This document shows, in pieces, positions 22,001 to 54,650 of a stretch of DNA of 64,000 bases; position 1 is the first letter of the stretch; the number at the start of each line of letters is the position of its first letter. The notes beneath the pieces were generated by a model. It worked only from the letters and a program-made list of their open reading frames with translations, ran no database searches and had not been told where the DNA came from. The DNA is taken from positions 124,001 through 188,000 of IMG/VR virus record IMGVR_UViG_3300032675_000001. One strand, given 5' to 3'. The translations under genes were made by a program, and so were the position numbers.

Positions 22001-22444
22001 AGCCGGGTCATTCCATAGAACTGGAATATTACTCAAGTTAAAACCGTTGATGTCCGTGATATTTTGCGTGGTTGATACGCTCGTTACCTTGAGATATCCT
22101 TGGGCAGCTAAGTTACGTTTTGGTGTATATCCGACAAGATTGGCAAGTTTAATAACTGAGTCTCTACGCTCAGCAGTGTCCATAAAGTTTTCGCGAGCAT
22201 TTAAGTCATCACGAAAAGCAAGACCTTGGCCCATGAAAGCAATAACATCCAAGAGGGCAATAAATTCTGACGATTCAGTATAATCATTGAAAGTTTCTGG
22301 ATAATACAGACGTAGATAGTCTACGAAACTCTTACGAAGTGTTTCGTAATCATAGCTTTGAAAGTCAGCCTGTTGGTATGTCTGATAGATTGTCTTCCAA
22401 TCGTTTACTCCAAACAATGCTGATTGTCTTGAACTTGTTGCCAT
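19073..22444 (-). CDS. Baseplate wedge subunit, T4 gp6-like
   Basis: DFxSYDYETLR, RENFMDTAERRDSV..LA..VGY.P and QNRMVNGEDY motifs; lies next to gp25. Confidence 0.85.
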   Translation of the reverse strand: MATSSRQSALFGVNDWKTIYQTYQQADFQSYDYETLRKSFVDYLRLYYPETFNDYTESSEFIALLDVIAFMGQGLAFRDDLNARENFMDTAERRDSVIKLANLVGYTPKRNLAAQGYLKVTSVSTTQNITDINGFNLSNIPVLWNDPANPNWLEQFNTIFNAAIINSQRIGKPGNTQDILGVTTSEYAIQIAPNALPIIPFNATIDNQGMNFELVSVTSVNQDYIYEIPPAPTGQFNMVYRNDQLGFGSPNTGFFFYFKQGTLQNYDFSLQQQISNQIIPIGTIEGINNTDTWLYQINSDGTRTPWVQVDNIYANAYLQSPTTLNPLFSVYSGVNDTVSYVFGDGVFSQIPVGNFRSYVRSGNALTYTIDPTEMSGLSVSFTYIDNTGRAQTLTLALSLQTSVSNAQARETITDIKQRAPLRYYTQNRMVNGEDYSNFPYTLYSSIIKSTAVNRSSVGVSKNLDLLDPTGKYSSTNSFGSDGALYQDNTDGTLTLTINTTSDIISFFTNNLASVLGLNRANQYYIQNYPRYAVNSTVGPGTVYWQTSTVDTGAETGYLYTYVQAAQIPMTVGTYSSSNLKYVTTGAICQFSAPTGYYFDSNNRLVAGIPGPNNSTSVWTTVLNVIGDGSNNGIGSFSNGSGPVQVNGYLPSGVILTQVIPVFDNIISSANIQEAIIRMELQQSFSLVFNNSLPINQDRWSISTYNDPAAFVNLQSTGNNNYIVYYNALTYYFGSVSDTRFTFDSNQVVYDPYSGQILQDFVNVLGINSQFGNSVPLGQDTSLNIVGQTVESDGYVNDFQVEVAATDVNNRQLILNPDFFSNITGYVNGSTNVGVYVFFETVVDPLNLTRDYIVPSSAVSYQYPTISQIEVVKYDYPVGQLFYAYAENNFYTSVQDPTVITPSYTMVIQPQYTMLPGRQGLSYQYRHNSNNTNRIDPVVTNIIDLYLVTQSYYTQYTNWIQDTTNTIPKPDVPTINELSQDYPLIQDYKMLSDSVILNSVVFKPLFGAKAAPALQGTIKVVPAANTSASNSEIQSAVLTAMNNYFNINNWNFGDTFYFSELSAYLHNECGDLISSAVLVSNDPTQPFGDLYEITCLPYEIFVNAATANDIMVIAALTPAELQVR

Positions 22445-32643: not shown

Positions 32644-33660
32644 ATGTCGAACCTATTCAAAAAAGCAGCAGTATTCACCGACATACACTTTGGACTAAAG
32701 AGCAATAGCCTGCAACACAATCAAGATTGTGCAGACTTTGTTGATTGGTTTATAGAGAAGGCAAAATCTGAAGGGTGTGAAACGTGTTTGTTTTTGGGTG
32801 ATTGGAATCACCACAGAGCAAGCATTAACATTCACACCCTCCAGTTTGGTCTTCGTGCATTAGAAAAACTCAATGCATCGTTTGAAAAAGTGTATTTCAT
32901 TCCCGGCAACCATGATCTCTACTACCGAGACCGTAGAGACATTCATTCAGTTGAGTGGGCATCTCATCTGCCTAATGTGACCATCGTAAACGATTGGTTC
33001 AGTGAAGGCAATGTTGTGATCGCTCCTTGGCTGGTGGGTGAAGACTATAAGAACCTACCCAAACTAAAGGGTAAGTATCTTTTCTCGCATATGGAACTAC
33101 CAAACTTCTATATGAACGCAATGGTTGAAATGCCAGATCATGGCGAAGTCAACCTTGATCACATCAAACACTTTGATCGCGTATTTTCTGGACACTTCCA
33201 CAAGCGCCAATCCAAGAAAAACGTCTGGTATATTGGTAATGCCTTCCCGCATAACTATGCAGATGCTGGTGATGATGCGCGTGGTATGATGATATTGGAA
33301 TGGGACCAAGAACCTGAGTTTTATTCATGGCCCGGACAGCCAATGTTCCGTGTATACAAACTCAGTGAGATTCTTGACAATCCAGAAGGATTACTTCTTC
33401 CGAAGTCAAACGTGAGAGTTCATCTTGATATTGACATCTCATACGAAGAAGCAAACTTTATCCGAGAAACTTTAATCCCGACATACAGTCTTCGTGAAAT
33501 GGCACTTATTCCAGTAAAGAATAGTGAACATTCACAAGACTTGGCACCGGGAGAACTAAAGTTTGAGTCCGTTGACCAGATTGTATTAGAAAGTATAAAT
33601 AACTTAGAAAGTTCCACCTTCGATAGGAATTTACTAAGGAGCATATATGATAATCTGTGA
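32644..33660 (+). CDS. Recombination nuclease, gp47/Mre11/SbcD-like
   Basis: Metallophosphoesterase motifs DIH, GD, GNHD, H, SGHFH. Confidence 0.92.
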   Translation: MSNLFKKAAVFTDIHFGLKSNSLQHNQDCADFVDWFIEKAKSEGCETCLFLGDWNHHRASINIHTLQFGLRALEKLNASFEKVYFIPGNHDLYYRDRRDIHSVEWASHLPNVTIVNDWFSEGNVVIAPWLVGEDYKNLPKLKGKYLFSHMELPNFYMNAMVEMPDHGEVNLDHIKHFDRVFSGHFHKRQSKKNVWYIGNAFPHNYADAGDDARGMMILEWDQEPEFYSWPGQPMFRVYKLSEILDNPEGLLLPKSNVRVHLDIDISYEEANFIRETLIPTYSLREMALIPVKNSEHSQDLAPGELKFESVDQIVLESINNLESSTFDRNLLRSIYDNL

Positions 33661-34615
33661 GTATTGTAAATTAGAGGCAGCGCACACCTTCAAAAACGGA
33701 ATTCATTGTTGCAGTAAAAATGTGTCTGGGTGTCCAGAAATCCGAGCAAGACGAGAGAATACCGCTATGGTGAAATACGGAGACAAAAACTTCAAAAACC
33801 ACACCAAAGCAAAAAAAACTAAGCTAACACGGTACGGTGATGAAAATTATAATAATCGCCAGCAAGCAGAAGCAACGACAACTAAAATGTATGGAGTTTC
33901 CAATGTTAGTAAAATAGAAGACATAAAAGTAGCGAAACAATCTACCTTTAGTAAAAACTATCCTATAGGGTCATCCGAAAGAACTGACTTAGGTAATACC
34001 AGGGCAATCTCTTGGAAATCGAATGTTGTGTCCGAGATTACGGACAAAATAAAAACTACGTGCGCAGATAGGTATGGAGTGGACAATCCGAATAAAAACC
34101 CAGATATCGTTTCTAAACGAAAGCAAACAAACTTGGCTAGATACGGACAGCAGCCCGGATTCGGCACGGAGAAGTTTAAAAACACCATTAGACAAAAATA
34201 CGGGGTGGAGAATGTCTCGCAACTCGCAGAAATTCACGAAAGACAACAGCGACCTAATTGGAAATCATACACTCTTCCTTCCGGAAAAATTATTAAGGTG
34301 CAAGGATACGAAAACTTAGCGCTGGATGCATTGATGTCGGTGTATGACGAAAATGATGTTATTACGGTTAGGAAAGAAATACCGGCGGTTTGGTATGAAC
34401 ACGATAACATACGCAGAAGGTATTATCCAGATATGTTAGTTGTGCCTACCAACACGATAATAGAAGTTAAATCGGAATACATTTTTAAAAATAATGAAGA
34501 AGTCAACATGAAGAAAAAAGATGCATGTTTATCCATGGGGCTGGCATTTGAGTTTTGGATATACGAATCAAAAACACACGAACTAAGAAAGCTAATATAT
34601 CCCGCATGTCAATAA
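33647..34615 (+). CDS. Putative free-standing homing endonuclease with a C-terminal PD-(D/E)xK domain
   Basis: N-terminal Cys cluster; repeated KYGVxNxS DNA-binding-like motifs; YYPD...IIEVKS; inserted between gp47 and gp46 and overlapping both. Confidence 0.7.
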   Translation: MIICEYCKLEAAHTFKNGIHCCSKNVSGCPEIRARRENTAMVKYGDKNFKNHTKAKKTKLTRYGDENYNNRQQAEATTTKMYGVSNVSKIEDIKVAKQSTFSKNYPIGSSERTDLGNTRAISWKSNVVSEITDKIKTTCADRYGVDNPNKNPDIVSKRKQTNLARYGQQPGFGTEKFKNTIRQKYGVENVSQLAEIHERQQRPNWKSYTLPSGKIIKVQGYENLALDALMSVYDENDVITVRKEIPAVWYEHDNIRRRYYPDMLVVPTNTIIEVKSEYIFKNNEEVNMKKKDACLSMGLAFEFWIYESKTHELRKLIYPACQ

Positions 34616-36761: not shown

Positions 36762-37517
36762 ATGAATATTTATCATAAAACATTACCATATATCTATAAA
36801 TGGATACATATACCTACCGGAAAATGGTATATTGGTTCTAAAGTGAGAACTGGATGGAACCCCTCGCGACATGAAGAGTATATATGTTCGAGCAAAGAAG
36901 TCAAGCCATTGGTTATGGAAAATCGAGATGATTGGGAATATCATATTCTGCATACTGGTGATGCAGCTTATATTGTCAATTTGGAAAAAATTATACTGTC
37001 TGAATTAGATGCTAGGAATGACCCAATGAGTTATAACCAGCACAACGGGGATGGACTATACAATAGATATGGTGTTAAAGAAAATGAAAACACTAGACTT
37101 AAGAAAAGTGCCGCTCGCTTAGCCGAAAAAAACCCAATGTATGGTAAAAGAGGTGACCTGTCCCCACATTATGGTAAATCACATTCATCTTGTTGGAGAA
37201 AAAACCAAAGCATTGGTCTAAAATTGTATAATGAAAATAGACCTGCTGAGCATAACAATAATATTTCAAAAGCATTGAAGGGTAACCCAAAACTATCAGA
37301 AAAAATGATTGGAGAAAATAACCCGCGTTATGGCAAACCAGCTTTAGAGCACAACAAACGCGCCTCGTCAATTGCAAATTCAGGAAACAATAACCCCATG
37401 AAAAAACCAGAACATCAGCGTACATGTGAACATTGCTGTAAAACCGTGGCTAAAAATCATTATACACTATTCCATCGGGACAAATGTAGATCAAAACCTG
37501 CAACCGACATAGAATAA
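36762..37517 (+). CDS. GIY-YIG-like (Seg-type) homing endonuclease with NUMOD3-like repeats
   Basis: YIYKW...WYIGS; NPMYGK/NPRYGK repeats; C-terminal CxxC..H..C. Confidence 0.75.
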   Translation: MNIYHKTLPYIYKWIHIPTGKWYIGSKVRTGWNPSRHEEYICSSKEVKPLVMENRDDWEYHILHTGDAAYIVNLEKIILSELDARNDPMSYNQHNGDGLYNRYGVKENENTRLKKSAARLAEKNPMYGKRGDLSPHYGKSHSSCWRKNQSIGLKLYNENRPAEHNNNISKALKGNPKLSEKMIGENNPRYGKPALEHNKRASSIANSGNNNPMKKPEHQRTCEHCCKTVAKNHYTLFHRDKCRSKPATDIE

Positions 37518-38148: not shown

Positions 38149-38176
38149 CTCAACATCTAGCACATTTCCTAGCACA
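38058..38176 (+). repeat. Cluster of short C/A-rich direct repeats
   Basis: CTCAACATCTAGC at 38058 and 38149; CTAGCCCATCA x2; CAGACAC x2; CTAGCACA x2. Confidence 0.6.
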
Positions 38177-38189
38177 AAAACCCCACATT

Positions 38190-38760
38190 GCTGTCTGGTG
38201 TACGTTCGTAGACCCTCCTTGAGGAAGCAGGATTTAGAACCCCTGTAGTCCGGATTCTGGAGTATGCCTGACCGAGAGGTCAGTGCCAGATTCAACATAG
38301 TCTGGTGGAGTCTGATAGTAATATCGACCGCAAAAGCGTTAAGCAGCAATATGGTGTTTAACATTTGTGCTTTAGGAATACCGACAGGGCAATCGCACAG
38401 TAGGCGAACCCTGAATGAGTCCGTATTTAGTTTATCTCGTGGATACGGAACATGCGTTGTCGAGGAACTGGGTTAAACCAGCAGCCTCACTACACCTCCA
38501 TAAAAACCTTACAGGACAACCGGTGGCGAGCAGTAGCGTAAAAAGGCTAACTGATCGGGAGAGAGATAATAATGTATACGATGGGCCATGGCATATCGGA
38601 ATATTAGTAGTGCTTTCTGCGGAAAGCACTACTATGTCCTCCAAACCGGCAATTGTATCCGAAGTGACAATCTTTCTTAAAGAAATTAAAGCTACTAAAC
38701 GATAAAAAAATGAAAACGAACGAAGTGAGTTTTCAGATGAACGAAGTTCATCTCTTGACT
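38190..38760 (+). ncRNA. Candidate large structured ncRNA / structured origin element
   Basis: No credible ORF; more than 12 consecutive stem-loops, including GAGA and GTAA (GNRA) loops, a 13-bp cTGCGg (UNCG) hairpin, a long-range GTTGTC/GACAAC pair and terminal cGAAg hairpins. Confidence 0.6.
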
Positions 38761-38805
38761 TAAACAAAAGATGAACTCCTTAATATACGGCTGGGATAGG
38801 TGGGT

Positions 38806-39036
38806 TTAGAAATAAGGCAGTTGTGATTGCTTGGTTATTTCTAGATTGTTCTCAATGATTTCATTGATAGACTGACGTTCAAAAGCAGACATATTTAATA
38901 TGTCCTCATAAGAAGCACCTCCACGCATGTGCCATGCCATGGATAATGCTCCTTTCTTCACTCCCTCAACTTCAACTTCGTATTGTTTAATAAGCTTCTG
39001 AATTTCCTCGGGTGTGGAATGCAGAAGCTTTATTCG
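38806..39036 (-). CDS. gp51-like / gpT-like segment, probably translated by -1 frameshift from the upstream gene
   Basis: 76-codon open -1 frame RIKLLHSTPEEIQKL...WHMRGG.SYEDILNMS.FER...LPYF with no start codon in its first ~25 codons; not in the ORF track. Confidence 0.7.
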   Translation of the reverse strand, partial: RIKLLHSTPEEIQKLIKQYEVEVEGVKKGALSMAWHMRGGASYEDILNMSAFERQSINEIIENNLEITKQSQLPYF

Positions 39037-39854
39037 AAAAAATCCACTGGGCTTAGTGTGAATGGTTGTTCATATTCGTGCCCACATCCGTCACACTTAA
39101 TGTTAAGTGGTTTTATTTCTGTTGCGGCTTTAAGTTCACCGTTGTAATCTCTGATCTTATTGTAGACATTTCTATCACAGTTCTTCAAGTAATCAAGGAT
39201 GAATTCTTTTTGATCTACTCTAACGCTTGAAGTTTGAATATACTCAATAGTCTGTGTCAATAGATTCATTGTGAGAGCAGTAATCTTTTCTAACGTATCT
39301 TTAGTGATTCTGTTCTTTTCTTCTTCTGATTCTGAGTTTTCAATGTTCACAAATGTACGCTGAAGTTCAAAATTTGCCAAAGCGGCATCATTCATTTCCT
39401 TGTAAGTAAGAGGTTTGAACTTGATGCTCAAGTCTCCAACAGTCAAAGTGTTATCGTAATTTCCTGGCTTTAAGGTATTAAGAATAGGAATAAGATTGAC
39501 GCCATAAGTGTTGGTTTCTGTGCACGAAGGGCATGAAGTTTCAAGCTCAAGTACATCACCGGAAGAAGCAATCTTGATGGCGATCAAAATAGCATCCATA
39601 TCGTTGCTGCTAATTTTCCAAGGGTCTTTGATCACTGGAACACAACTTTTCACAATGTCAACGAGTGCCGTACCATTAAAAAGTGCGTCCGGTGTTCTGG
39701 TGGTGATTTCATCAATAGCAGTCATGGGATATACTGGGATTTCTCCAGTTTCAGGGATGTCAATCATGCCATCCACGTAATCTTTTCCTCCGGAAGGAAG
39801 CTTAAAATATACAGCCGGTCTTCGGAAGTATTGCTTTAGTGGGTTGTTGTTCAT
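39030..39854 (-). CDS. Baseplate hub / tail assembly chaperone, gp26-like
   Basis: NPLKQYFRRP..Y..LPS.G, PMTAIDEI, two CxxC pairs, ends DFFE. Confidence 0.7.
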   Translation of the reverse strand: MNNNPLKQYFRRPAVYFKLPSGGKDYVDGMIDIPETGEIPVYPMTAIDEITTRTPDALFNGTALVDIVKSCVPVIKDPWKISSNDMDAILIAIKIASSGDVLELETSCPSCTETNTYGVNLIPILNTLKPGNYDNTLTVGDLSIKFKPLTYKEMNDAALANFELQRTFVNIENSESEEEKNRITKDTLEKITALTMNLLTQTIEYIQTSSVRVDQKEFILDYLKNCDRNVYNKIRDYNGELKAATEIKPLNIKCDGCGHEYEQPFTLSPVDFFE

Positions 39855-39951
39855 TTCAGTTCCTCATAAAAAATGGAGTATTTACTAGTAATAAATAGTT
39901 ACGTAATATTTAGTGCTCAAAAAGTAGCAAAAAATAAAGTTCGGATTGACA

Positions 39952-42900
39952 ATGGACGCAGACTTAATTGCTCAGATAAATGATAAGCTTAAAGAGATGA
40001 ATGACTTGCTTACTAAGCAAGGTTCTGTTATTACAAGTCAAGTAAATGCAATAAACAGTTCTACATCAGCAACTAAAAATTTGTATTCGTCCACTCAAAC
40101 CCTATCAAATTCAGAGAAAGAGGCTGATTCCACCTATACTGGAGTTTCTAAAAAAAGTGAAGCTGCGGCAAAAGCATCTTCTGTTATGGATGAATCTACC
40201 ACTCAGCTTACTAAGGCATTGAATGACGGGAGCACCGCCGTCCTCGGCTTTGCGCACAGTATGTTGGATACCACTCCGGGCTTAACAAAATACGCCAGAA
40301 GTGTTACCGATATGGCCCTTGTTGTTTCTGACCTTGCCGCTCCATTTGGGCTGTTAGGTAAAGCAGCGGGCGGAATAGTGGCTATTCTCGGTACTCTTGT
40401 GGGTGCTTCATTTAAGTATTCAGATGCTGCTGTAAAAAGTTACGACGAGATATCAAAGGCTGGGGCTGGCATAGGAGAAAGTGCTGATAGCTTTTTAAAG
40501 CTTGCACATCAGGCAAATTTATCATCTCAAAACATGGGAATACTGTCAAAAGGAGTAACTGACTTAGGTGATAAGCTTTTATTCTTGGGTTCAACTACGT
40601 CAAAGGGCGCTGAAACCTTTGTTAAAATGGCTTCGTTTAACGACAAGACCTTAAAGCAATACAGAAATCTAGGTTTTACTCAACAGGACCTTATTGAGTC
40701 TCAAGAAAAATATTTAGAATTGCAGGCACAATCTGGCGCTGATATGAGAAAAAGCCCACAAGAGTTGCAGAAGGCTTCTCTTGAATGGATTGACCAACAG
40801 AATGAACTTGCTGAACTAACCGGAATCAATGCAAAAACTCAACAAGAAGCATTAGCTAAGGCTTTAGCTCAGGCCAACTTCCAAGCATATATTACCGGAG
40901 AAGAACAAAAGAAAAATGATGCCATCAAAAGGGGAGATACCGCATTAGCTGCTGAAATAGAACAACGAATAAAAGTAAAGAAAGAAGCAGCAACCTATGC
41001 GGAAGCAACATACGGTGCAGTAAAAGCCACCGCCATTCTTCAAGGTATATCTACAGATGGTGCAACAGTAATAGGACAGAACCAAGCCGCTCTTATGCGT
41101 AGTGGTCAAAATGTTGCAGAATATAATGAAATGTTGAATAAAGGTCAAAGTGTAGTTAAACGTATGTCTTCGGATAACGTTAATGCTATAGACCAATATA
41201 GAAAAAACTATGGTGAAATGGGTCAGGCTGCTGGTGAAGCATCCAGAAACATGATGAAAATCAACATGATTGACAATCAATCAATCGCAGCAGCCGCAAG
41301 AGACTCTCAACTGAAAACTACAGCAGGAAAGAGACAACAAACAAAAGAAGAACAAGAAGCTGCAGCCGCCCTTGAACGTGAGAAAAAATATAATGGCGAA
41401 ATCATGGCTAATAGGGCGCAGCAGGAACAATATGAACGTCAAATTCGTCAAGCACTTGATCCTATACTAGGAAAGTTATCAGATCAAATCAATGTACTTG
41501 TTTTAAAGCTTCAGCCGGTGATCACTAAAGTTATCGGTCTAATCAGTAAGAATATGAATTATGTAATTGATGTCGCAAAAGGTTTAGCAGTAACGTTTGG
41601 TATTATGTTTGGTGCGGTAGCGATAGGTAAAGTAGTAGGGTCAGTAAGATCATTTAAAGATGGTTTTTCTAAATGGAGAAAAGGTGAAAGTGGTGCAGTA
41701 GGTAGTGCAAACAATGCTGCTTGGGTAGTTTTTGATGAAAAGAGTGAAGTATTAAGTAAATTGTCAGGTGGAGGAGGAACTTCCGGGATACCCAAAGTTA
41801 GAAAAGCAGATTTGCTTGATAAAAATGGTAAAGTTTTACAAGGTGGCGCACTGCAAGAGAGAATGAAAAAGCTGGCAAGACAGCAAGGTCTTTCTGGGCA
41901 TACGGAAAATAGTGAACAAGAACTTGGTGGAACATTAGGCAATTTAGTTGATGTACTAAAATACGCTTCCAAAAATGCAGCAGATATTATAAAAGGTGGT
42001 GCAGCATTAGGACTTTCTTTAGCCGCTGTGGGTGGTGGAGCCGCCGCCGCCATATGGATTGTGGGTAAAGCTTTACCAACTTTTGCAAATGGTATGAAAT
42101 CGTTCAACGAGGTTAATGGTAAAAATCTTGAGGGCGTTGGCATAGGGTTGGCTGGAATCGGAAGCGGCATCCTAATGATGTCTAGTGGCGCAGTATTGGG
42201 CGTTTTAAGTACTATTGCAACATTGGTTGGTGGAAAAACCCCATTACAAAAAGCGGCAGATGAACTTTATCAGTTCCAAAAGCTAAACATAGATTCTAAA
42301 AAAGTTAAAGCAAATGGAGAAGCTGCTATAGTATTTGCTAAAGCACTAGCTGGTGCTGTGGCTATATCTGAGTTCAGTAAGCTTACTGACAGTTTAAATG
42401 GTTTTTTTGAGTCTAAACCTCCTTTTAAGGATTTTGAGGATTTCTCAAAACTAAACATAAATGAACCTAAAGTAAAAAATAATGCTACAGCATTCAAGGA
42501 GTTTGCCGAAGCGATGGATTCATACAAAGGTGGTGGTACCGTTGGTACTGTAACTACCGCTATAGCTGAATCTGTTGCTAACCATTTCAAGGTAAATCCT
42601 CCTATCAAGGAATTTCAGTATTTTTCAACATTGAAGATTGATCCTATTCAAACAAAAAAGAATGCAACAGCATTCAAGTATTTTTCTGAGGCAATCGCAG
42701 AATACAAAGGAACTAATAGTGGGGTAATAGACTCACTTAATGCTCTCATCGGAAGCTCGTTGAATAAGTTGTTCAATTTGGATGGGCCGATAGATTCTTT
42801 TGTAAACTTCACAAACAAGTCGTTTGGTCCAAATGCAGAAAAAAATGCTGACGCTTTCTACAAATTTGCTTCGGCTATGGGAATACTGTCAGGTTCAACT

Positions 42901-43797
42901 AATGCAACTGGCTCGGCAAACTCCGCAGTAAACGGGGTGGTTGGAGCTATAGGCGGTGCACTAAGTTCCGGTGCAACTATATTGGGCGCTGCGGCAGGTG
43001 CGGCAGCAGATTGGGTTTCTAGCGTATTCAAGTTAGGAAAACCAAAACCAGAATATGTTGGTGTTATGCAGATCGCAAAAAAATCTGGTGATCCTCATCC
43101 GGAAATAACTGCAGCACAGTGGGCATTGGAATCCGGATGGGGTAAACATATGTCTGGTAAAAACAACCCATTTGGGCAAAAAGCAAAAAAGGATAAAGGT
43201 GGAAATCCTATAGAGCCAGCCACTTTACGCAGAACGCGAGAAGTTATAGGAGGAAAGGAGATATTCATCAATGATTATTTCAAAGATTATCCTACACAAG
43301 ATGCTGCAATTGCTGAACATGCACAAAAGTGGACAGCAAGAAAAACCCAGCCGGGATCATCCCCGCTAGAAGCTGCCGCAGCAATTAAAGCGGCAGGATA
43401 TGCCACTGACCCAAATTATGTTAAATCATTGGCTAATATTGTTGCAAGTAATGGTATTGATCCAAAAGCGCCACTGAAAGCCGCAAAAGGTGGTATTTTT
43501 GATGGTCCAATAACTGGATATCCAATGGAACTTCACGGAACTGAAATTGTAGTACCAATGGATAAAGACTCCTTACTAAAAAGACTGGCCACACAAAATC
43601 ATGACGAACAGGAGGATTTGTTACATTCACTTATGTCGCCTGAAACAAAAATCCATCATGAAACAGAATCTGATGTTATTGTAAAAATGGATACGGAAAT
43701 GAAGATGGTTTTACTTGATAAGTTAAGTAAAATGCTATCGGTCATTGATAGTAGACATGAAACTGCTAAAAAAATACTACAACACACACGTACATAA
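39952..43797 (+). CDS. Tape-measure-like protein 1 with a C-terminal GH73 glucosaminidase (FlgJ-like) domain
   Basis: Long helical Ala/Lys-rich body with hydrophobic segments; AAQWALESGWG, NNPFGQK and GYATDPNY motifs; ATG 39952 aligns with the paralog start. Confidence 0.75.
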   Translation: MDADLIAQINDKLKEMNDLLTKQGSVITSQVNAINSSTSATKNLYSSTQTLSNSEKEADSTYTGVSKKSEAAAKASSVMDESTTQLTKALNDGSTAVLGFAHSMLDTTPGLTKYARSVTDMALVVSDLAAPFGLLGKAAGGIVAILGTLVGASFKYSDAAVKSYDEISKAGAGIGESADSFLKLAHQANLSSQNMGILSKGVTDLGDKLLFLGSTTSKGAETFVKMASFNDKTLKQYRNLGFTQQDLIESQEKYLELQAQSGADMRKSPQELQKASLEWIDQQNELAELTGINAKTQQEALAKALAQANFQAYITGEEQKKNDAIKRGDTALAAEIEQRIKVKKEAATYAEATYGAVKATAILQGISTDGATVIGQNQAALMRSGQNVAEYNEMLNKGQSVVKRMSSDNVNAIDQYRKNYGEMGQAAGEASRNMMKINMIDNQSIAAAARDSQLKTTAGKRQQTKEEQEAAAALEREKKYNGEIMANRAQQEQYERQIRQALDPILGKLSDQINVLVLKLQPVITKVIGLISKNMNYVIDVAKGLAVTFGIMFGAVAIGKVVGSVRSFKDGFSKWRKGESGAVGSANNAAWVVFDEKSEVLSKLSGGGGTSGIPKVRKADLLDKNGKVLQGGALQERMKKLARQQGLSGHTENSEQELGGTLGNLVDVLKYASKNAADIIKGGAALGLSLAAVGGGAAAAIWIVGKALPTFANGMKSFNEVNGKNLEGVGIGLAGIGSGILMMSSGAVLGVLSTIATLVGGKTPLQKAADELYQFQKLNIDSKKVKANGEAAIVFAKALAGAVAISEFSKLTDSLNGFFESKPPFKDFEDFSKLNINEPKVKNNATAFKEFAEAMDSYKGGGTVGTVTTAIAESVANHFKVNPPIKEFQYFSTLKIDPIQTKKNATAFKYFSEAIAEYKGTNSGVIDSLNALIGSSLNKLFNLDGPIDSFVNFTNKSFGPNAEKNADAFYKFASAMGILSGSTNATGSANSAVNGVVGAIGGALSSGATILGAAAGAAADWVSSVFKLGKPKPEYVGVMQIAKKSGDPHPEITAAQWALESGWGKHMSGKNNPFGQKAKKDKGGNPIEPATLRRTREVIGGKEIFINDYFKDYPTQDAAIAEHAQKWTARKTQPGSSPLEAAAAIKAAGYATDPNYVKSLANIVASNGIDPKAPLKAAKGGIFDGPITGYPMELHGTEIVVPMDKDSLLKRLATQNHDEQEDLLHSLMSPETKIHHETESDVIVKMDTEMKMVLLDKLSKMLSVIDSRHETAKKILQHTRT

Positions 43798-43829: not shown

Positions 43830-46800
43830 ATGGATTCAGAGTTAGAAGCACAGTTAAATGAACAGTTACAGCAGATGTCTGATCTATTGAGTCAGCAGAA
43901 TTCTGCTATGTCTGCTCAAATTAAGGCAATGAATGATGCCGTCAACGCATCTAACGGTCAGTCTTCTGCTGCTAAAAATTTATCCTCCGCTGAAAATGAT
44001 GCCGTAAAAAATACTAGCACAAGTAATAAAAAGGTAGAGTCTGCCGGAAAAGCCATGGACATGGTTAAAGAGGCAAATGAACGCTTATCGACCTCTTTAG
44101 ATAAAGGCAAATCAGCCATATCAGGATTTGCTGTAGCAATGACTGATGTTACCCCTGGAATGGCAAAATATGCAGCAAGCTTAAAAGATGCTACACTTGC
44201 TGTTGCTACCATGGCTTCTGGTTTTGGTCCTTTAGGAAAAGCAACAGAAGGTATTCTTGGTGTTTTTGCTAGTCTTGTTACCGCCGCCACCAAATACAAT
44301 GATGCAGTGGTTCAGGGTTATGATGATGTTTCTAAGCTAGGAGCAGGCATAGGAACGAGTGCGGAAGACATAGTTAAACTTGGACATAATGCAGGTCTTT
44401 CATCACAAAACTTATCGCTGTTGACAAAGAACGCTGCATCTTTGGGAATGAATATTCGCTCGCTTGGAACAACAACTTCCAAAGGTTTAGATACATTTGG
44501 AAAGATGATAGCAGTTGGTGATACCACTCTTGAGCAATATCGTAAGTTGGGTTTTTCTCAAGAGGACTTGATTGAAGCGCAGACTGCATATATTGACATA
44601 CAAACGCAGGCTGGTGCAGATTTAAAGAAAAGTCCAGAAGAACTCCAAAAAGCATCTTTGGCTTATATTGACAATCTTAATGTCATGGCTGAAATGACTG
44701 GTGTTTCCGTAAAGCAACAACAGGATGCACAGAAACAAGCATTAGCACAAGAAAACTTTGATGTCTATATGTCAGGACTGCAAGCCAAAAAGGCAGAAGC
44801 ATTAAAATCGGGAAACAAGGCGGAAGCGGATAGATTACAAAAAATTTATGATGCTAAGTTAGAACTTGCAACTCAGGCTAAAGCAAACCTTGATCCAAAA
44901 CAAGCACAAGGAGTTTTAGAAGGCATTTCTACTAATGGTAAGACCATTATGTCTAAAGAAGTTGCCAAGCTTGAAATGTCTGGTATTCATATTAGTAAAA
45001 TGAATGATGAATTGAACAAGGGCAACAAGCAAACCGGAAGATTACTGGGAGAAAATGCGCAGGCAGTAGAAAACTATAGAAAACGATTCGGTGATTTGGG
45101 GACTGCTGCCGGGGATGCCTCCATTGGAATGATGAATGCATTCAATCTAGGTGTAAAAAGTTTTGAGTCTGGTAATAAATTTTATGATCTCAGAACAAAA
45201 GAAGGACAAGAGGCTTGGCAAAAACAATATGATGCCACAGTAGAAAAGCAGAAAAAAGATAAAGAAAGTCATGATAAATTACTGGACCAAAGAGCGGCTC
45301 TGGAAAAGAATGAAAGACAAGCAAGATTAGCGTTTGATGATTTGCTTTCAAAACTTTCTGCTATGTTTACTAAGGTTGCTTTAAAAGCAATGCCTCTAAT
45401 GGTATCGGCTTTAACTTTCATTTCTAATCATTTTGATACTATTGTTACTGTAACTAAAACTCTTGGTATTGCACTGGCAGCACTCGCAGCAGTTATGGCT
45501 GGTGCGAAAGTTGTTAACTTTTTCCGATCATTTACTGATAATATGAAAGGAATATTTTTAGGAAAACAAACACTAGGATCATCTACTACCAAACCAATGC
45601 ATGTTCGTATGGCAGGATCAGGTAAAGCGGTTACAACTGGTTCCGGCGCAGTAAGTAAAATGATTGGAAAATCAGCAAGTGCTGGGAATTTACTAAATGA
45701 AGCGGAAGAAGTTGCCGGTAAAAAAGGTAACAAAAATGGGATGCTTGGTAAAGCAGAACAAGGCATGTCTGGGATATCAAAAATGTCCTCCGCACCGGGA
45801 GCAGACAAATCTGGAATTTTTCTGGAAGGACTAGCCAAAGGACTTCAAGCATTAGGTAAAGCTGCCCCAGAGGTTATTGAAGGTTCTGGTGCTCTAGCAG
45901 CAGCAATTGTTGCTATTGGCGCTGCAGTGGGTGCAGCAGGGTTTATACTTGGTAAAACTTTACCATATCTTGCAACGGGATTGCATGATTTTGATAAAGT
46001 TAATGGTGAAAATCTAAAAGATGTTGGTATTGGTATGGCAGGTCTCGGCGCAGGTATACTTGCCATGGGAGGTTCTACTGTTGTTAATGCATTTGGTAGT
46101 ATCGTCAGTATGTTCAGTCAGGGAAAGGATGAAAAAAATGATCCTATCAAAAAACTTGGTGAACAGATTGTCAATTTTCAAAATATACCTATTAAACCAG
46201 ATAAAGTTGAAAAGAACGCAAAAGCTTTCGTGGCGTTTTCCCAAGCATTTGCTCAAGCTGCCGCAACTTCTTCTTTGGGAACTGTTGCGTCTGGTATAGC
46301 AAATGGCGTTAGTGGATTTTTTAGTAAGGAGCCACCATTCAAAAAATTCAAAGAATTCTCTGAGTTAAAGATAAACGAAGTCCAAACAAAAAAGAATGCA
46401 TTGGCGTTTAAAGAATTTGCTGAGGCAATGTCTTCTTATCATGGCAATGGTCCATTGGGAGCACTTGGTAGCATCAGTACGGCACTTGCTGATGCTGTGT
46501 ACAAGCATTTTCAAATGAAACCACCGGTTGATGAATTTGCGCATTTTGCAAGTCTCCCTATTGATCCAAAAAAGGCAAAATCTAATGCGGAAGCATTTGT
46601 TGATTTCGCAAACGCGATGTCCAACTATAAAGCAGCGCCGGGAGCATTAGATGCTTTAAGTCAACTAGTTGGTGGTGGATTAATGAAACTGGTTGGTGTA
46701 GGAGGACCAGTTGATGCTTTTGCTGATTTTGCAAAAAGAGACTTTGGTCCAAATATGGAAAAAAATGCAGACGCATTTCAAAAATATGCCGAAAGTATGG

Positions 46801-47714
46801 CTGCGTCTGGTGGAATCGCAGGATCAAGTCCTGGTGGCGGTGGCGGCGGTGGCGCTGGTGGATCAAGTGGCGCTGGTGGCAGTGCACTACAATCAGGAGT
46901 AAGTGCAGGACAGGCTGCAGTTGGATTTGTTGGTGGTCTAGTTAGTGGTGCAGGAAATTTAGTGTCTAATGCATTTGATTGGGCAAAAGCAGGGATTACA
47001 GGAAAACCAACTGACGTTTTGAATTTCACAGGCGAATCAGGTCAATATGCAAATTTTGCAGCACTTGACCCTGCCATGCAACAGGCTGTTATTCTATCAG
47101 CAACAGATTATAAAAAAGCAACCGGAAGAAAAATGACAATAAACAGCGCAAGACGTTCTGTTGCAGACCAAGAAAGATTGTGGGCGGAAACTGTAAAGTT
47201 GGGACATCCGGGCATAGGTCCACATGGCATGTTAGTTGCGAAGCCACCAAGACTTGGTGGTAATCCTCCTCATTTAAGAGGTAATGCCATTGATATTCAA
47301 GAAGGTGTTTCTGATTCGGCTAAAGCAATACCTATTCTCAAAGCACATAACTTAAAACAAACATATGGTGGAAAAGACCCGGTTCACTTTGATTTAAAAG
47401 CAAAAGATGGTGGTGTATTTGATGGTCCACGTGGTGGATATCCTATTGCAATGCATGGTTCCGAAATGATCTCTCCTTTGAAAAAGGATTCCATTCTGAT
47501 GAAACTTGCTAAAACGTCTGCATCAAAAGTAAATGCAACTGATGCGAAAAAGAAAATATCACAAGTAAGTCAAACACATGGATCAAGTCAAGTATTATAT
47601 TCAGAAAACATGAGACTTAATAAAGAGATAGCTGAAAAGCTGGATAGAGTTATTACGGTTCTTGAAAGCGATCACGATACTCAGCATAAGATATTGCGTG
47701 AAGTTCGCATTTAA
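43830..47714 (+). CDS. Tape-measure-like protein 2 with a C-terminal M15-like Zn peptidase domain
   Basis: Colinear paralog of the previous ORF; INSARRS..Q..L, H.RGNAID and DPVHF motifs. Confidence 0.75.
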   Translation: MDSELEAQLNEQLQQMSDLLSQQNSAMSAQIKAMNDAVNASNGQSSAAKNLSSAENDAVKNTSTSNKKVESAGKAMDMVKEANERLSTSLDKGKSAISGFAVAMTDVTPGMAKYAASLKDATLAVATMASGFGPLGKATEGILGVFASLVTAATKYNDAVVQGYDDVSKLGAGIGTSAEDIVKLGHNAGLSSQNLSLLTKNAASLGMNIRSLGTTTSKGLDTFGKMIAVGDTTLEQYRKLGFSQEDLIEAQTAYIDIQTQAGADLKKSPEELQKASLAYIDNLNVMAEMTGVSVKQQQDAQKQALAQENFDVYMSGLQAKKAEALKSGNKAEADRLQKIYDAKLELATQAKANLDPKQAQGVLEGISTNGKTIMSKEVAKLEMSGIHISKMNDELNKGNKQTGRLLGENAQAVENYRKRFGDLGTAAGDASIGMMNAFNLGVKSFESGNKFYDLRTKEGQEAWQKQYDATVEKQKKDKESHDKLLDQRAALEKNERQARLAFDDLLSKLSAMFTKVALKAMPLMVSALTFISNHFDTIVTVTKTLGIALAALAAVMAGAKVVNFFRSFTDNMKGIFLGKQTLGSSTTKPMHVRMAGSGKAVTTGSGAVSKMIGKSASAGNLLNEAEEVAGKKGNKNGMLGKAEQGMSGISKMSSAPGADKSGIFLEGLAKGLQALGKAAPEVIEGSGALAAAIVAIGAAVGAAGFILGKTLPYLATGLHDFDKVNGENLKDVGIGMAGLGAGILAMGGSTVVNAFGSIVSMFSQGKDEKNDPIKKLGEQIVNFQNIPIKPDKVEKNAKAFVAFSQAFAQAAATSSLGTVASGIANGVSGFFSKEPPFKKFKEFSELKINEVQTKKNALAFKEFAEAMSSYHGNGPLGALGSISTALADAVYKHFQMKPPVDEFAHFASLPIDPKKAKSNAEAFVDFANAMSNYKAAPGALDALSQLVGGGLMKLVGVGGPVDAFADFAKRDFGPNMEKNADAFQKYAESMAASGGIAGSSPGGGGGGGAGGSSGAGGSALQSGVSAGQAAVGFVGGLVSGAGNLVSNAFDWAKAGITGKPTDVLNFTGESGQYANFAALDPAMQQAVILSATDYKKATGRKMTINSARRSVADQERLWAETVKLGHPGIGPHGMLVAKPPRLGGNPPHLRGNAIDIQEGVSDSAKAIPILKAHNLKQTYGGKDPVHFDLKAKDGGVFDGPRGGYPIAMHGSEMISPLKKDSILMKLAKTSASKVNATDAKKKISQVSQTHGSSQVLYSENMRLNKEIAEKLDRVITVLESDHDTQHKILREVRI

Positions 47715-53894: not shown

Positions 53895-54650
53895 ATGTTC
53901 AAAGAAAACAAATACACCAAACATTACATGCTTCTCATCGATAATGCAAGAAATCGTAAACTTCCACTAGAGCAGTATAAAGAACGCCATCACATCATAC
54001 CCCAATCATTAGGCGGCTCGAATGATAAATCTAATTTAGTTTGGCTTACTGGACGAGAACATGCACTTTGTCATTGGGCACTATTAAAGATGACAGAAGG
54101 AGAAAATCGTGCTAAAATGTCATATGCATTTAATGGAATGAACGCAGAGAATGAGTTCCAACAGAGATACCATTCTCGAATTATAACGCGAGCATATGAA
54201 CGGCATCGGATTGAACATGCTAAAGTACATTCTGAAAGAATGAAGGGTAAAACTGCGTGGAACAAAGGCAGAAAATTGGAAGGCGAAGAGTTAGAACAGC
54301 ACCTAGAACGAACACGTAACAGAATTATTGATCCAGTTAAACAGGCTGAGGGGCAATTAAAAAGGATTGCTAAAGTAACTGGCCAAAAACGCACAGAAGA
54401 AACAAAAATAAAAATGAGTATTGCTTCAACAGGTAAACTAAAGGGAGCAATGTCAGATGATCATAAAGCCGCCATAAGTGCAAGCGGGAAGGGTAAACCT
54501 AAGAAAGAAGGACATGCTGAAAATGTTCGTAAAGCCAACATAGGTAACGTGTCTATTAACAAAAATGGGATTGAGAAAAAAGTCAAACGTGATACTCTTG
54601 ATCAGTGGTTGAGTGAAGGCTGGAGTCTAGGCGGAAGGAAAAGAAAATGA
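53895..54650 (+). CDS. HNH homing endonuclease (Mob-like) with NUMOD3-like repeats
   Basis: ERHHIIPQSLGGSN...NLV.LT.REH...H; AWNKG and RTEETK.KMS motifs. Confidence 0.85.
   Translation: MFKENKYTKHYMLLIDNARNRKLPLEQYKERHHIIPQSLGGSNDKSNLVWLTGREHALCHWALLKMTEGENRAKMSYAFNGMNAENEFQQRYHSRIITRAYERHRIEHAKVHSERMKGKTAWNKGRKLEGEELEQHLERTRNRIIDPVKQAEGQLKRIAKVTGQKRTEETKIKMSIASTGKLKGAMSDDHKAAISASGKGKPKKEGHAENVRKANIGNVSINKNGIEKKVKRDTLDQWLSEGWSLGGRKRK

What the first reader, a model, noticed from the sequence alone, without database searches (positions are those of the whole stretch)
38806..39045. Programmed -1 frameshift (lambda G/GT-like) at the end of the gp26-like gene
Seen on the minus strand: ...GAT TTT TTC GAA TAA contains an in-frame slippery heptamer T TTT TTC (39042-39036). 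Five nt later a perfect 9-bp stem AAGCTTCTG/CAGAAGCTT (39030-38992) begins, with an inner TTCC/GGAA. The -1 frame stays open for 76 codons and has no start codon near its beginning. Established: tail-assembly chaperones of long-tailed phages are made as G and GT forms by -1 frameshifting near the tape-measure gene. Inference: products of 274 aa and ~349 aa, implying that this T4-like 'gp26/gp51' pair is a G/GT chaperone system. Here it is transcribed divergently from the tape-measure genes.
Basis: partly seen in the sequence, partly recalled or inferred. Interest (0 to 1): 0.7.

Follow-up and report, generated by a model that had tools for sequence, protein, structure and literature searches.

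The report
Conserved -1 frameshift joining gp26 and gp51
A jumbo T4-like lake phage almost certainly makes a short and a long baseplate-hub assembly protein from one gene by a programmed -1 ribosomal frameshift; the two forms correspond to the separate gp26 and gp51 proteins of phage T4, and the same signal is conserved across distant T4-like phages without being annotated.

Summary
The minus-strand gene 39854-39030 (274 aa, Pfam PF12322, the T4 gp26/gp51 family) ends GAT TTT TTC GAA TAA. Five nt later a hairpin starts (-15.8 kcal/mol, z -5.6). The -1 frame stays open for 76 more codons, giving a 349-aa product.

Comparative evidence for a programmed -1 frameshift is strong:
- The heptamer T TTT TTC is invariant in 73 unique junctions, down to about 30% protein identity (Rak2-like phages, PA5oct, Atu_ph07). 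It is also present in cyanophages, KVP40-like and other T4-like phages.
- The -1 region evolves as coding sequence from the slip site onward.
- 58 of 73 junctions have no start codon there, and internal ATGs lack ribosome-binding sites.
- The stem arms use atypical synonymous codons and show a few compensatory changes.

The main new point concerns T4. The -1 extension is homologous to the C-terminal tail of T4 gp51. T4 has two PF12322 genes (gp26 short, gp51 long), while all ten frameshift-type genomes checked have one.

A chaperone role like lambda G/GT is analogy only: I found no sequence or fold similarity to known tail assembly chaperones. No protein evidence exists, and I found no publication or annotation of this frameshift.

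The parts
39030..39854 (-). 0-frame gene: a 274-aa member of the T4 gp26/gp51 baseplate-hub assembly family with a four-Cys motif. This is the short product, equivalent to T4 gp26.
   Evidence: PF12322 at 60 bits against a cut-off of 24.5; phrog_150 'baseplate hub'. AlphaFold2 model pLDDT 95.7. It is the only PF12322 gene in the complete 360,683-bp genome.
39036..39042 (-). Slippery heptamer U UUU UUC in X XXY YYZ register. Two tRNA-Phe can re-pair one base back on UUU UUU.
   Evidence: Read directly. Invariant, together with the preceding A and following G, in 73 unique junctions. Elsewhere in the same genes Phe codons are 54% TTT and 46% TTC, and Asp is 71% GAT.
39030..39032 (-). 0-frame stop codon TAA, one codon after the heptamer and lying within the spacer and the foot of the stem.
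   Evidence: The stop lies one codon after the heptamer in 68 of 73 junctions.
38992..39030 (-). Stimulatory hairpin 5 nt downstream of the heptamer. Outer 9-bp stem 39030-39022 / 39000-38992; inner UUCC 39019-39016 / GGAA 39007-39004.
   Evidence: MFE -15.8 kcal/mol, z -5.55. RNAalifold recovers the outer stem in 64 sequences: 95.5% of cells paired, 5 compensatory cells. Across 71 loci the site window averages -13.8 kcal/mol against -4.6 for windows from the same genes. Codon choice in the arms is atypical.
38806..39042 (-). -1 frame extension: FF plus 76 codons plus TAA. It forms the C-terminal 76 aa of the 349-aa transframe product (join 39854-39036 with 39036-38806) and is equivalent to the C-terminal tail of T4 gp51.
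   Evidence: Translation. Homologous -1 ORFs start at the slip site in all relatives. Codon-position entropy shows a coding pattern from the slip site. hhalign against gp51 tails gives E 1.9e-6.
38938..38954 (-). AAGGAG (38954-38949), 8 nt, then ATG (38940-38938) inside the extension. This is a possible internal start for a 44-aa peptide, specific to this phage.
   Evidence: Read. It is not conserved: of 47 relatives with a start-type codon at this position, 5 have a Shine-Dalgarno match of 4 nt or more and 1 has 5 nt or more.
39946..43797 (+). Divergently transcribed 1283-aa protein with a C-terminal glucosaminidase domain. Probably tape-measure-like; not part of the frameshift cassette itself.
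   Evidence: PF01832 at residues 1042-1169. Among named Atlas look-alikes, the tape-measure families TMP_3 and PhageMin_Tail score 0.91-0.92. It shares a 115-aa C-terminal tail with the next gene, 43830-47714. Similarity to T4 gp29 is not significant.

Best explanation
The gp26-like gene is expressed as two proteins by a programmed -1 ribosomal frameshift.

**Proposed mechanism.** Most ribosomes read GAU UUU UUC GAA and stop at UAA, giving the 274-aa protein. A fraction pause with tRNA-Phe in both the P and A sites on U UUU UUC, because a hairpin begins 5 nt downstream. Both tRNAs slip back one base onto UUU UUU. Translation then continues with CGA (Arg) for 76 more codons, giving a 349-aa protein with the same first 273 residues and a new, probably helical, tail.

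**What the products are.** The short form corresponds to T4 gp26. The long form corresponds to T4 gp51, which has the same domain plus a homologous C-terminal tail. In T4 both are listed as baseplate-hub assembly chaperones. T4 encodes them with two diverged paralogous genes. This phage and many other T4-superfamily phages encode both with one gene plus the frameshift.

**Shown here:**
- the site, hairpin and open frame;
- their conservation;
- the coding signature of the -1 frame;
- the absence of a conserved start;
- homology of the extension to the gp51 tail;
- one gene in the frameshift-type phages against two in T4.

**Inferred:**
- that ribosomes actually shift, and how often;
- that the two forms act as assembly chaperones for the hub and tape measure, as lambda G/GT do for the tail.
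For: **1. The heptamer is conserved at the nucleotide level.** T TTT TTC, with the preceding A and following G, is invariant in 73 unique junctions from IMG/VR relatives at 50-100% protein identity and from cultured jumbo phages at about 30% identity: Atu_ph07, Phosso, Vibrio 2.275.O, GAP32, CBB and PA5oct. It is also present in cyanophages Syn19 and P-HM2, Aeromonas AS-zj, Stenotrophomonas Mendera, KVP40-like Va3, ACP17, Paraglaciecola GD1 and ORM_20. Background codon usage gives P(GAT TTT TTC | Asp-Phe-Phe) = 0.18 per lineage. T4 gp26 needs no shift, and there the homologous Phe-Phe is encoded TTC TTT.

**2. The -1 ORF is conserved from the slip site.** It is 57-79 aa in all these lineages and is recognisably homologous starting at the slip site.

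**3. The -1 frame evolves as coding sequence.** Entropy by codon position for extension codons 4-33 is 0.90/0.72/1.41. The upstream coding region gives 0.95/0.60/1.37. Sequence after the extension's stop is flat at 1.70/1.74/1.79.

**4. There is no conserved independent start.** In 58 of 73 junctions the codon after FFR cannot start translation. Internal ATGs almost never have a Shine-Dalgarno sequence.

**5. No naturally fused gene was found among close relatives.** The best 150 cluster representatives (30% identity or more) all end at the Phe-Phe site.

**6. The hairpin is conserved.**
- In the window it folds at -15.8 kcal/mol, z -5.55.
- Across 71 loci the mean is -13.8 against -4.6 kcal/mol for windows in the same genes; 79% fall in the lowest 5%.
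- In the 64-sequence alignment 95.5% of cells are paired, with CG to UA three times and GC to AU twice.
- Stem codons are atypical. Leu is CTT in 72 of 74 against 16% background. At extension codon 16, AAG is used in 67 of 74 genes (all 67 Lys codons) against 33% background.

**7. The extension is homologous to the gp51 tail.**
- L029 extension against T4 gp51 residues 200-249: BLASTP E 6e-6.
- Jumbo-only extension profile against gp51 tails: hhalign probability 89.6%, E 1.9e-6.
- Cyanophage-type extensions against gp51 tails: probability 95.9%, E 5.7e-9, aligned from the junction Phe.

**8. Gene counts match the model.** T4 has two PF12322 genes. The window's complete genome and nine other frameshift-type genomes have one each.

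**9. The review PMC3004832 lists gp26 and gp51 as hub assembly chaperones**.

**10. The sequence is identical in independent assemblies**.
Against: - There is no direct evidence: no protein, ribosome-profiling or reporter data. Frameshift efficiency is unknown.
- Both stem arms encode conserved residues (R/K-L-L and Q/K-K-L). Part of the stem's conservation is therefore protein-driven, and compensatory changes are few (5 cells).
- In the most distant phages the downstream structure is weak or displaced. GAP32 and CBB fold at only -6.5 and -7.5 kcal/mol, L029 has no stable structure, and the Atu_ph07 stem starts about 18 nt after the heptamer.
- Some junctions place an ATG or GTG over the stop codon: 14 of 73 in the 73-junction set (13 ATG, 1 GTG), among them Atu_ph07 and Phosso. 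Termination-reinitiation is possible in those.
- The window has its own AAGGAG-N8-ATG inside the extension, so a separate 44-aa peptide may also be made.
- The direct gp51-tail HMM scores the window's own extension only marginally (6.9 bits). The homology rests on profile-profile comparison and on intermediates.
- The chaperone role is carried over from T4 genetics, not tested here. Complex prediction gave no answer.
Confidence: 0.85

Rival explanations
1. The downstream ORF is a separate small gene. It would be translated by its own initiation or by termination-reinitiation after the gp26-like stop, and the T-run would be conserved only because the protein needs Asp-Phe-Phe.
For: GenBank records annotate it this way, as small 'hypothetical protein' or 'gp51' ORFs starting at internal ATGs. 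Atu_ph07, Phosso and about a fifth of junctions have ATG or GTG overlapping the stop. The window has AAGGAG-N8-ATG at 38954-38938.
Against: - 58 of 73 junctions have a non-start codon (ATA, CTA, TTA, GTA and others) at the stop overlap.
- The amino-acid sequence and the coding-type substitution pattern begin at the slip site, 20-35 codons before the first common ATG.
- Internal ATGs lack a Shine-Dalgarno sequence in nearly all relatives.
- The synonymous positions of the heptamer are invariant although Phe codon usage elsewhere is 54/46, and T4 gp26 uses TTC TTT at the same place.
- In T4 gp51 the homologous tail is covalently joined to the domain.
Confidence: 0.07
2. The two frames are joined at the RNA level. 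RNA polymerase would slip on the T6 run and produce a fraction of mRNAs with one base more or fewer. This would be transcriptional slippage rather than ribosomal frameshifting.
For: A homopolymer run is present and invariant. No RNA data were available to exclude this: run with kind 'any' and so not a dedicated RNA search, listed only DNA runs.
Against: Six T is short. From general knowledge, well-documented bacterial and phage cases need runs of about 8-9 or more. The register of the run relative to the 0 frame is strictly conserved (X XXY YYZ). A stable hairpin sits at the canonical 5-7 nt spacing with selected synonymous codons. Ribosomal frameshifting needs both features; polymerase slippage needs neither.
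Confidence: 0.05
3. The gene is simply broken: a frameshift mutation or homopolymer sequencing error in what should be a single 349-aa gp51-like ORF.
For: T4 gp51 shows that a continuous long ORF of this architecture exists.
Against: The same arrangement, with the stop one to four codons after the heptamer and the continuation in the -1 frame, recurs in 73 unique junctions and in about 15 cultured phage lineages. None of the best 150 cluster representatives is fused. Four independent metagenome assemblies give the identical sequence with no insertion or deletion.
Confidence: 0.01

Closest known systems
Lambda gpG/gpGT and the conserved tail-assembly-chaperone frameshift of long-tailed phages (Xu, Hendrix and Duda 2004, cited in PMC9024508; phage P2 E/E+E' at TTTTTTG, from memory)
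   Same: A -1 frameshift on a canonical heptamer a few codons before the stop of a tail-morphogenesis gene. It yields a major short form and a minor long form that share the N-terminal part. The gene lies next to a tape-measure-like gene. In some relatives (L029, AS-zj, ORM_20) it lies directly after a tail tube gene.
   Different: - The protein family is unrelated: PF12322, a 230-280-aa domain with four Cys, with no Pfam tail-assembly-chaperone hit and no fold match to solved structures.
- The extension is only about 60-76 aa.
- In this window the gene is divergent from the tape-measure-like genes, not upstream of them.
- The T4 homologues act in baseplate-hub assembly.
- Binding to the tape measure or the tube is untested.
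Phage T4 gp26 (208 aa) and gp51 (249 aa), hub assembly chaperones
   Same: Same Pfam family. The 0-frame product ends at the same ...FF-x position as gp26 (KEFFELL). The transframe product has the gp51 architecture, domain plus a homologous C-terminal tail. That tail is helical in the gp51 model.
   Different: T4 uses two separate, divergently transcribed, diverged genes and no frameshift; its Phe-Phe codons are TTC TTT in gene 26, and gene 51 is continuous. The jumbo-phage extension is about 25 aa longer than the gp51 tail. In a tree, gp26 and the gp51 domains group together (support 90/91, with a long-branch warning), nested among single-gene lineages. This suggests the T4 state is derived by duplication.
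'gp51' mini-ORFs annotated downstream of gp26 in cyanophages and relatives (T4-like gene cluster 12; P-HM2 30 aa, Paraglaciecola GD1 57 aa; the adjacent gp51/gp26 pair of DLP6, PMC5349666)
   Same: These are the same -1 frame extension. The P-HM2 'gp51' ORF is in frame with, and forms the last 30 codons of, the 64-aa -1 ORF that starts at GAT TTT TTC.
   Different: They are annotated as free-standing genes starting at internal ATGs. No record or paper that I found links them to gp26 by a frameshift.

Membership tests
Canonical -1 programmed ribosomal frameshift cassette | Slippery heptamer X XXY YYZ in register with the upstream frame | tested here: met
   T TTT TTC at 39042-39036 in the 0 frame. 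Invariant in 73 unique junctions and in 8 further cultured lineages.
Canonical -1 programmed ribosomal frameshift cassette | Stable RNA structure 5-9 nt downstream of the heptamer | tested here: met
   The hairpin starts 5 nt downstream; -15.8 kcal/mol, z -5.55. It is conserved within the clade with selected synonymous codons. It is weak or displaced in GAP32, L029 and Atu_ph07.
Canonical -1 programmed ribosomal frameshift cassette | A -1 ORF that overlaps the slip site, has no start of its own and is under protein-coding selection from the slip site | tested here: met
Canonical -1 programmed ribosomal frameshift cassette | Transframe protein demonstrated (junction peptide, reporter assay or ribosome profiling) | not testable with these tools
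   No protein or ribosome data are available. Published proteomes of relatives were searched against annotated ORFs only.
Lambda G/GT-type tail assembly chaperone | Short and long products sharing the N-terminus through a -1 shift near the 3' end | tested here: met
   Predicted products of 274 and 349 aa. Inferred from the comparative evidence, not observed.
Lambda G/GT-type tail assembly chaperone | Gene located between the tail tube gene and the tape measure gene | tested here: inconclusive
   In the window the gene is adjacent to, but divergent from, two tape-measure-like genes, with no tube gene upstream. In L029, AS-zj and ORM_20 it directly follows a tail tube gene.
Lambda G/GT-type tail assembly chaperone | Sequence or fold similarity to known tail-assembly-chaperone families | tested here: not met
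   No tail-assembly-chaperone Pfam or PHROG hit. Foldseek against the PDB gives no hit better than E 0.5. VIA-align finds only a generic helical hairpin, Z 7.4 or less. There is no solved PF12322 structure.
Lambda G/GT-type tail assembly chaperone | Binds the tape measure protein; required for assembly; absent from virions | not testable with these tools
   Complex prediction with the tape-measure-like C-terminal tail returned 'no answer'. The review PMC3004832 says T4 gp51 is absent from particles.
PF12322 (T4 gp26/gp51 baseplate-hub assembly proteins) | Pfam profile match above the gathering threshold | tested here: met
   60 bits against 24.5, residues 38-273. T4 gp26 scores 215 bits and gp51 177 bits against the same model.
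PF12322 (T4 gp26/gp51 baseplate-hub assembly proteins) | Two conserved CxxC pairs (probable zinc ribbon) | tested here: met
   C108, C111, C254 and C257 are invariant or nearly so in alignments A3 and A5.
PF12322 (T4 gp26/gp51 baseplate-hub assembly proteins) | gp51-type C-terminal tail (listed as PF28602 in precomputed annotations) | tested here: met
   Present only through the -1 frame. hhalign E 1.9e-6 for jumbo extensions and 5.7e-9 for cyanophage-type extensions. The direct gp51-tail HMM scores the window's own extension marginally, 6.9 bits. PF28602 is not in the local Pfam copy.

The most novel reading that the evidence does not exclude
The PF12322 gene with its -1 frameshift is the ancestral T4-superfamily counterpart of the G/GT tail assembly chaperone, the chaperone that T4-like phages have appeared to lack. 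T4's long-enigmatic gp26 and gp51 would then be the two frameshift products, fixed as separate genes after a duplication. If so, hundreds of published cyanophage, jumbo-phage and KVP40-like genomes carry an unannotated recoding event.
Probability: 0.5. Interest if true: 0.8.

Novelty: new variant of a known kind. Interest (0 to 1): 0.72.

Why it matters
**Roles of T4 gp26 and gp51.** T4 is the reference myovirus, yet these roles have stayed unclear. [quoted passage not shown] If the two are the short and long products of what is one frameshifted gene in most of the superfamily, this gives a concrete model: a common domain with or without a small helical tail, made in a fixed ratio. That model can be tested by genetics and pull-downs.

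**Reach of the two-form frameshift theme.** It would extend the '-1 frameshift, two-form tail chaperone' theme to the T4 superfamily, with an unrelated protein fold.

**Evolution.** It would give a clean natural example of gene duplication replacing a recoding signal, or the reverse.

**Annotation.** It would correct many phage genomes. The extension is currently annotated as a tiny 'hypothetical' or 'gp51' ORF, or left unannotated as in PA5oct.

Tried and rejected
- **Pfam, PHROGs and NCBIfam on the 78-aa extension:** no family found.
- **Rfam on 38700-39200:** nothing.
- **tRNA and promoter/terminator scans around the locus:** nothing useful.
- **Sequence search of the PDB with family profiles:** no structure.
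- **Foldseek against the PDB and a wide VIA-align search with the pLDDT 95.7 model:** no meaningful match, so neither a tail-assembly-chaperone fold nor any other fold can be assigned.
- **Complex prediction of the 274-aa protein with the conserved C-terminal tail of the tape-measure-like protein:** verdict 'no answer'. This is not evidence either way.
- **BLASTP of the 1283-aa neighbour against T4 gp29:** not significant (E 0.089).
- **hhalign of the extension profile against a single T4 gp51 sequence:** weak (P 0.009). It became convincing only with family alignments.
- **Direct gp51-tail HMM:** finds cyanophage-type extensions (P-HM2 33 bits) but scores the window's extension marginally.
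- **Literature:** ten full-text searches found no description of a gp26/gp51 frameshift. Subscription-only papers are not covered.
- **CBB and phAPEC6 proteome papers:** gave no usable information on this gene.
- **Rejected explanations:** sequencing error, pseudogene, and a free-standing small gene (see rivals).
Full report
**1. What is in the sequence**

On the minus strand, the ORF 39854-39030 encodes a 274-aa protein. It ends GTG GAT TTT TTC GAA TAA.
- The heptamer T TTT TTC (39042-39036) is in X XXY YYZ register with the 0 frame.
- The stop follows one codon later.
- After a 5-nt spacer there is a hairpin spanning 39030-38992: a 9-bp outer stem with an inner UUCC/GGAA stem.
- It folds at -15.8 kcal/mol, z = -5.55 against dinucleotide shuffles.
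- Read from the heptamer, the -1 frame gives FFRIK...LPYF, 78 aa. The predicted products are therefore 274 and 349 aa.

The sequence is the same in contigs from four independent lake or freshwater metagenome runs, apart from one substitution at 39503 and with no insertion or deletion.

**2. What the gene is**

The 274-aa protein belongs to Pfam PF12322 (T4_baseplate): 60 bits against a cut-off of 24.5, and phrog_150 'baseplate hub'.

The window comes from a complete 360,683-bp phage genome with terminal repeats. It carries a T4-type core: gp6-, gp25- and gp5-like baseplate genes, a late sigma factor, SbcCD-like nuclease genes, a gp20-like portal, a protease and a major head protein.

The nearest cultured relatives of the gene are jumbo phages at 30-34% identity: Atu_ph07, Phosso, PA5oct and the Rak2-like group.

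**3. Conservation of the frameshift signal**

A tblastn search with the -1 extension alone hits the same phages. The matches start at extension residue 1 and overlap the end of the gp26-like gene in the -1 frame.

I read the junctions directly:

| Phage | Junction |
|---|---|
| Atu_ph07 | CAT TTT TTC GCA TGA |
| Phosso | CAT TTT TTC GAA TGA |
| Vibrio 2.275.O | TAT TTT TTC GAA TAA |
| GAP32 | AAT TTT TTC GTA CAA AGC TTC TAA |
| PA5oct | AGT TTT TTC AGA GAA TCC TAG |

Across 105 IMG/VR loci plus these phages there are 73 unique junctions.
- All carry the heptamer. The flanking A and G are also invariant in the window's clade.
- The 0-frame stop follows after one codon in 68 of them.
- The -1 ORF is 72-79 aa long.

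Synonymous sites elsewhere in these genes are close to saturated: third-position entropy is about 1.4 bits. Phe codons are 54% TTT and 46% TTC, and Asp is 71% GAT. The chance of GAT TTT TTC given Asp-Phe-Phe is therefore 0.18 per lineage.

**4. The -1 region is translated from the slip site**

| Region | Entropy by codon position |
|---|---|
| Upstream 0-frame coding region | 0.95 / 0.60 / 1.37 |
| Extension codons 4-33, before any common ATG | 0.90 / 0.72 / 1.41 |
| After the extension's stop | 1.70 / 1.74 / 1.79 |

- In 58 of 73 junctions the codon overlapping the stop is ATA, CTA, TTA, GTA or similar, and cannot initiate.
- Internal start-type codons rarely have a Shine-Dalgarno sequence. 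At extension codon 35, 5 of 47 do; at codon 39, 2 of 69 do.
- The window's own AAGGAG-N8-ATG (38954-38938) is therefore specific to this phage.
- Among the 150 best cluster representatives, at 30% identity or more, none is a fused long protein. All end at the Phe-Phe site.

**5. The hairpin**

RNAalifold on 64 ungapped sequences recovers the outer stem, GCUUCU paired with AGAAGC.
- 95.5% of cells are paired, against 36-60% when the 3' partner is slid by 1-3 columns.
- Five cells carry compensatory changes: CG to UA three times and GC to AU twice. No shuffle out of 500 reaches this.

Because the arms encode conserved R/K-L-L and Q/K-K-L, I checked codon choice.

| Stem-arm codon | At the site | Background in the same genes |
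|---|---|---|
| Leu CTT | 72 of 74 | 16% |
| AAG at extension codon 16 | 67 of 74 (all 67 Lys codons) | 33% |
| Gln CAG vs CAA | 27 vs 4 | CAG 27% |

So the stem is under selection at the RNA level.

Across 71 unique loci, the 45-nt window starting 5 nt after the heptamer averages -13.8 kcal/mol. Windows from the same genes average -4.6 (mean z -3.5), and 79% of the site windows lie in the lowest 5%. In distant phages the structure differs or is weak (GAP32, L029, Atu_ph07).

**6. Link to T4 gp26 and gp51**

T4 has two PF12322 genes.
- Gene 26 (208 aa) is the domain only and ends KEFFELL.
- Gene 51 (249 aa) is the domain at residues 1-201 plus a tail of about 48 aa. Precomputed annotations list that tail as a separate Pfam family, PF28602.

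The -1 extension is homologous to that tail.

| Comparison | Result |
|---|---|
| L029 extension vs T4 gp51 residues 200-249 (BLASTP) | E 6e-6 |
| Extension profile A1 vs gp51 alignment (hhalign) | probability 79%, E 1.6e-5, at the gp51 C-terminus |
| Extension profile A1 vs T4 gp26 (hhalign) | no match |
| Jumbo-only extensions (72 sequences) vs gp51 tails (hhalign) | probability 89.6%, E 1.9e-6 |
| Cyanophage-type extensions vs gp51 tails (hhalign) | probability 95.9%, E 5.7e-9, aligned from the junction Phe |

- T4 gene 26 encodes the homologous Phe-Phe as TTC TTT, which is not slippery.
- T4 gene 51 is continuous across the equivalent point.
- The window's genome, Atu_ph07, Phosso, Vibrio 2.275.O, GAP32, Syn19, AS-zj, Mendera, Va3 and S8 each have a single PF12322 gene.
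- In a maximum-likelihood tree, T4 gp26 groups with the gp51 domains (support 90/91, with a long-branch warning), nested among the single-gene lineages. This fits a duplication in the T-even lineage with the frameshift as the older state, but it does not prove it.

**7. How widespread it is**

A gp26-like query from L029 hits 1087 cultured phage records. I read ten further lineages.
- Eight have T TTT TTC one to three codons before the stop, plus a homologous 57-66-aa -1 ORF: Syn19, P-HM2, AS-zj, Mendera, Va3, ACP17, Paraglaciecola GD1 and ORM_20.
- Two, ViI-like S8 and Vibrio K448, keep the homologous -1 ORF but have ATT TTC A or CTT TTC A instead. This is unexplained.

GenBank annotates the tail end of this ORF as a 30-aa 'gp51' in P-HM2, and as a 57-aa 'baseplate hub assembly catalyst' in GD1. 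PA5oct leaves it unannotated. No record examined annotates a frameshift. Ten full-text literature searches found none described.

**8. Function**

The T4 tail review lists gp26 and gp51 as hub assembly chaperones. It calls gp51 essential, absent from particles and of unknown function. One phage record labels its gp51 homologue 'tape measure protein assembly chaperone'.
- The AlphaFold2 model of the 274-aa protein is confident (pLDDT 95.7).
- The model of a T4-type gp51 (pLDDT 91.8) shows the tail as four short helices.
- Neither Foldseek nor a wide VIA-align search finds a related solved fold. There is therefore no structural link to lambda-type tail assembly chaperones.
- The divergent neighbours are 1283 and 1294 aa. 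One has a glucosaminidase domain, and they share a C-terminal tail. Their Atlas features resemble tape measure families, but similarity to T4 gp29 is not significant.
- In L029, AS-zj and ORM_20 the frameshifted gene directly follows a tail tube gene. That is the classical chaperone position.
- A complex prediction with the tape-measure-like tail gave no answer.

**9. Verdict**

The frameshift is very probably real, ancient and widespread. The equivalence of its two products to T4 gp26 and gp51 is well supported by profile comparisons and gene counts. The G/GT-like chaperone role is a reasonable analogy, not a demonstrated membership. What is missing is any direct protein-level evidence.

Noticed in passing
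window 84-19064 (-): A single 6326-aa ORF lies next to the gp6-like baseplate wedge gene (19073-22444). It is presumably a giant fibre or baseplate-associated protein.
   Followed up: no
window 33647-34615, 36762-37517, 53895-54650 (+): Homing-endonuclease-like ORFs are inserted in conserved modules. One lies between the SbcD-like and SbcC-like nuclease genes, one after them, and one directly after the major head protein gene.
   Followed up: partly
window 39946-43797 and 43830-47714 (+): Two tandem proteins of about 1290 aa share only a 115-aa C-terminal tail (35% identity). The first carries a glucosaminidase domain. Language-model features resemble tape measure proteins. Two tape-measure-like genes in tandem would be unusual.
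   Followed up: partly
L042 (PA5oct NC_071039) 2031-2258: The 75-aa -1 ORF after the gp26-like gene of PA5oct has no annotation at all in RefSeq, although the heptamer AGT TTT TTC and a -13.8 kcal/mol hairpin are present.
   Followed up: yes
L125 (P-HM2) 1587-1781; L131 (Paraglaciecola GD1) 1596-1769: ORFs annotated 'gp51 baseplate hub assembly catalyst' (30 and 57 aa) are the tail ends of the -1 extension of the preceding gp26 gene.
   Followed up: yes
L128 (Salmonella phage S8, ViI-like) about 1630-1820; L133 (Vibrio K448) about 1610-1800: Both keep a homologous -1 ORF (..MPWHL..) after the gp26-like gene but lack the canonical heptamer (GAG ATT TTC ATT TAA; CTT TTC AAG TAA). They may use a P-site-only slip on U UUC or reinitiation (K448 has TAATG).
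   Followed up: partly
window about 38605-38632 (-), within the gene-poor stretch 38150-38800: A perfect 12-bp hairpin (AGTAGTGCTTTC / GAAAGCACTACT, loop CGCA) lies downstream of the extension's stop. It has no T-tail, and there is no tRNA. The Rfam search covered only 38700-39200, not this hairpin.
   Followed up: partly
L029 (IMGVR_UViG_3300037837_000054) 573-2249: In this T4-like contig, which is closest to cyanophage gp26, the PF12322 gene directly follows a tail tube gene (PF23849). It uses T TTT TTT immediately before TGA as the slip site, with no stable downstream hairpin.
   Followed up: partly
window 38700-39900: The phage is present with identical sequence in at least 16 lake-water metagenome runs and in a freshwater run from another study. 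It is therefore an abundant freshwater jumbo phage with no cultured close relative.
   Followed up: partly
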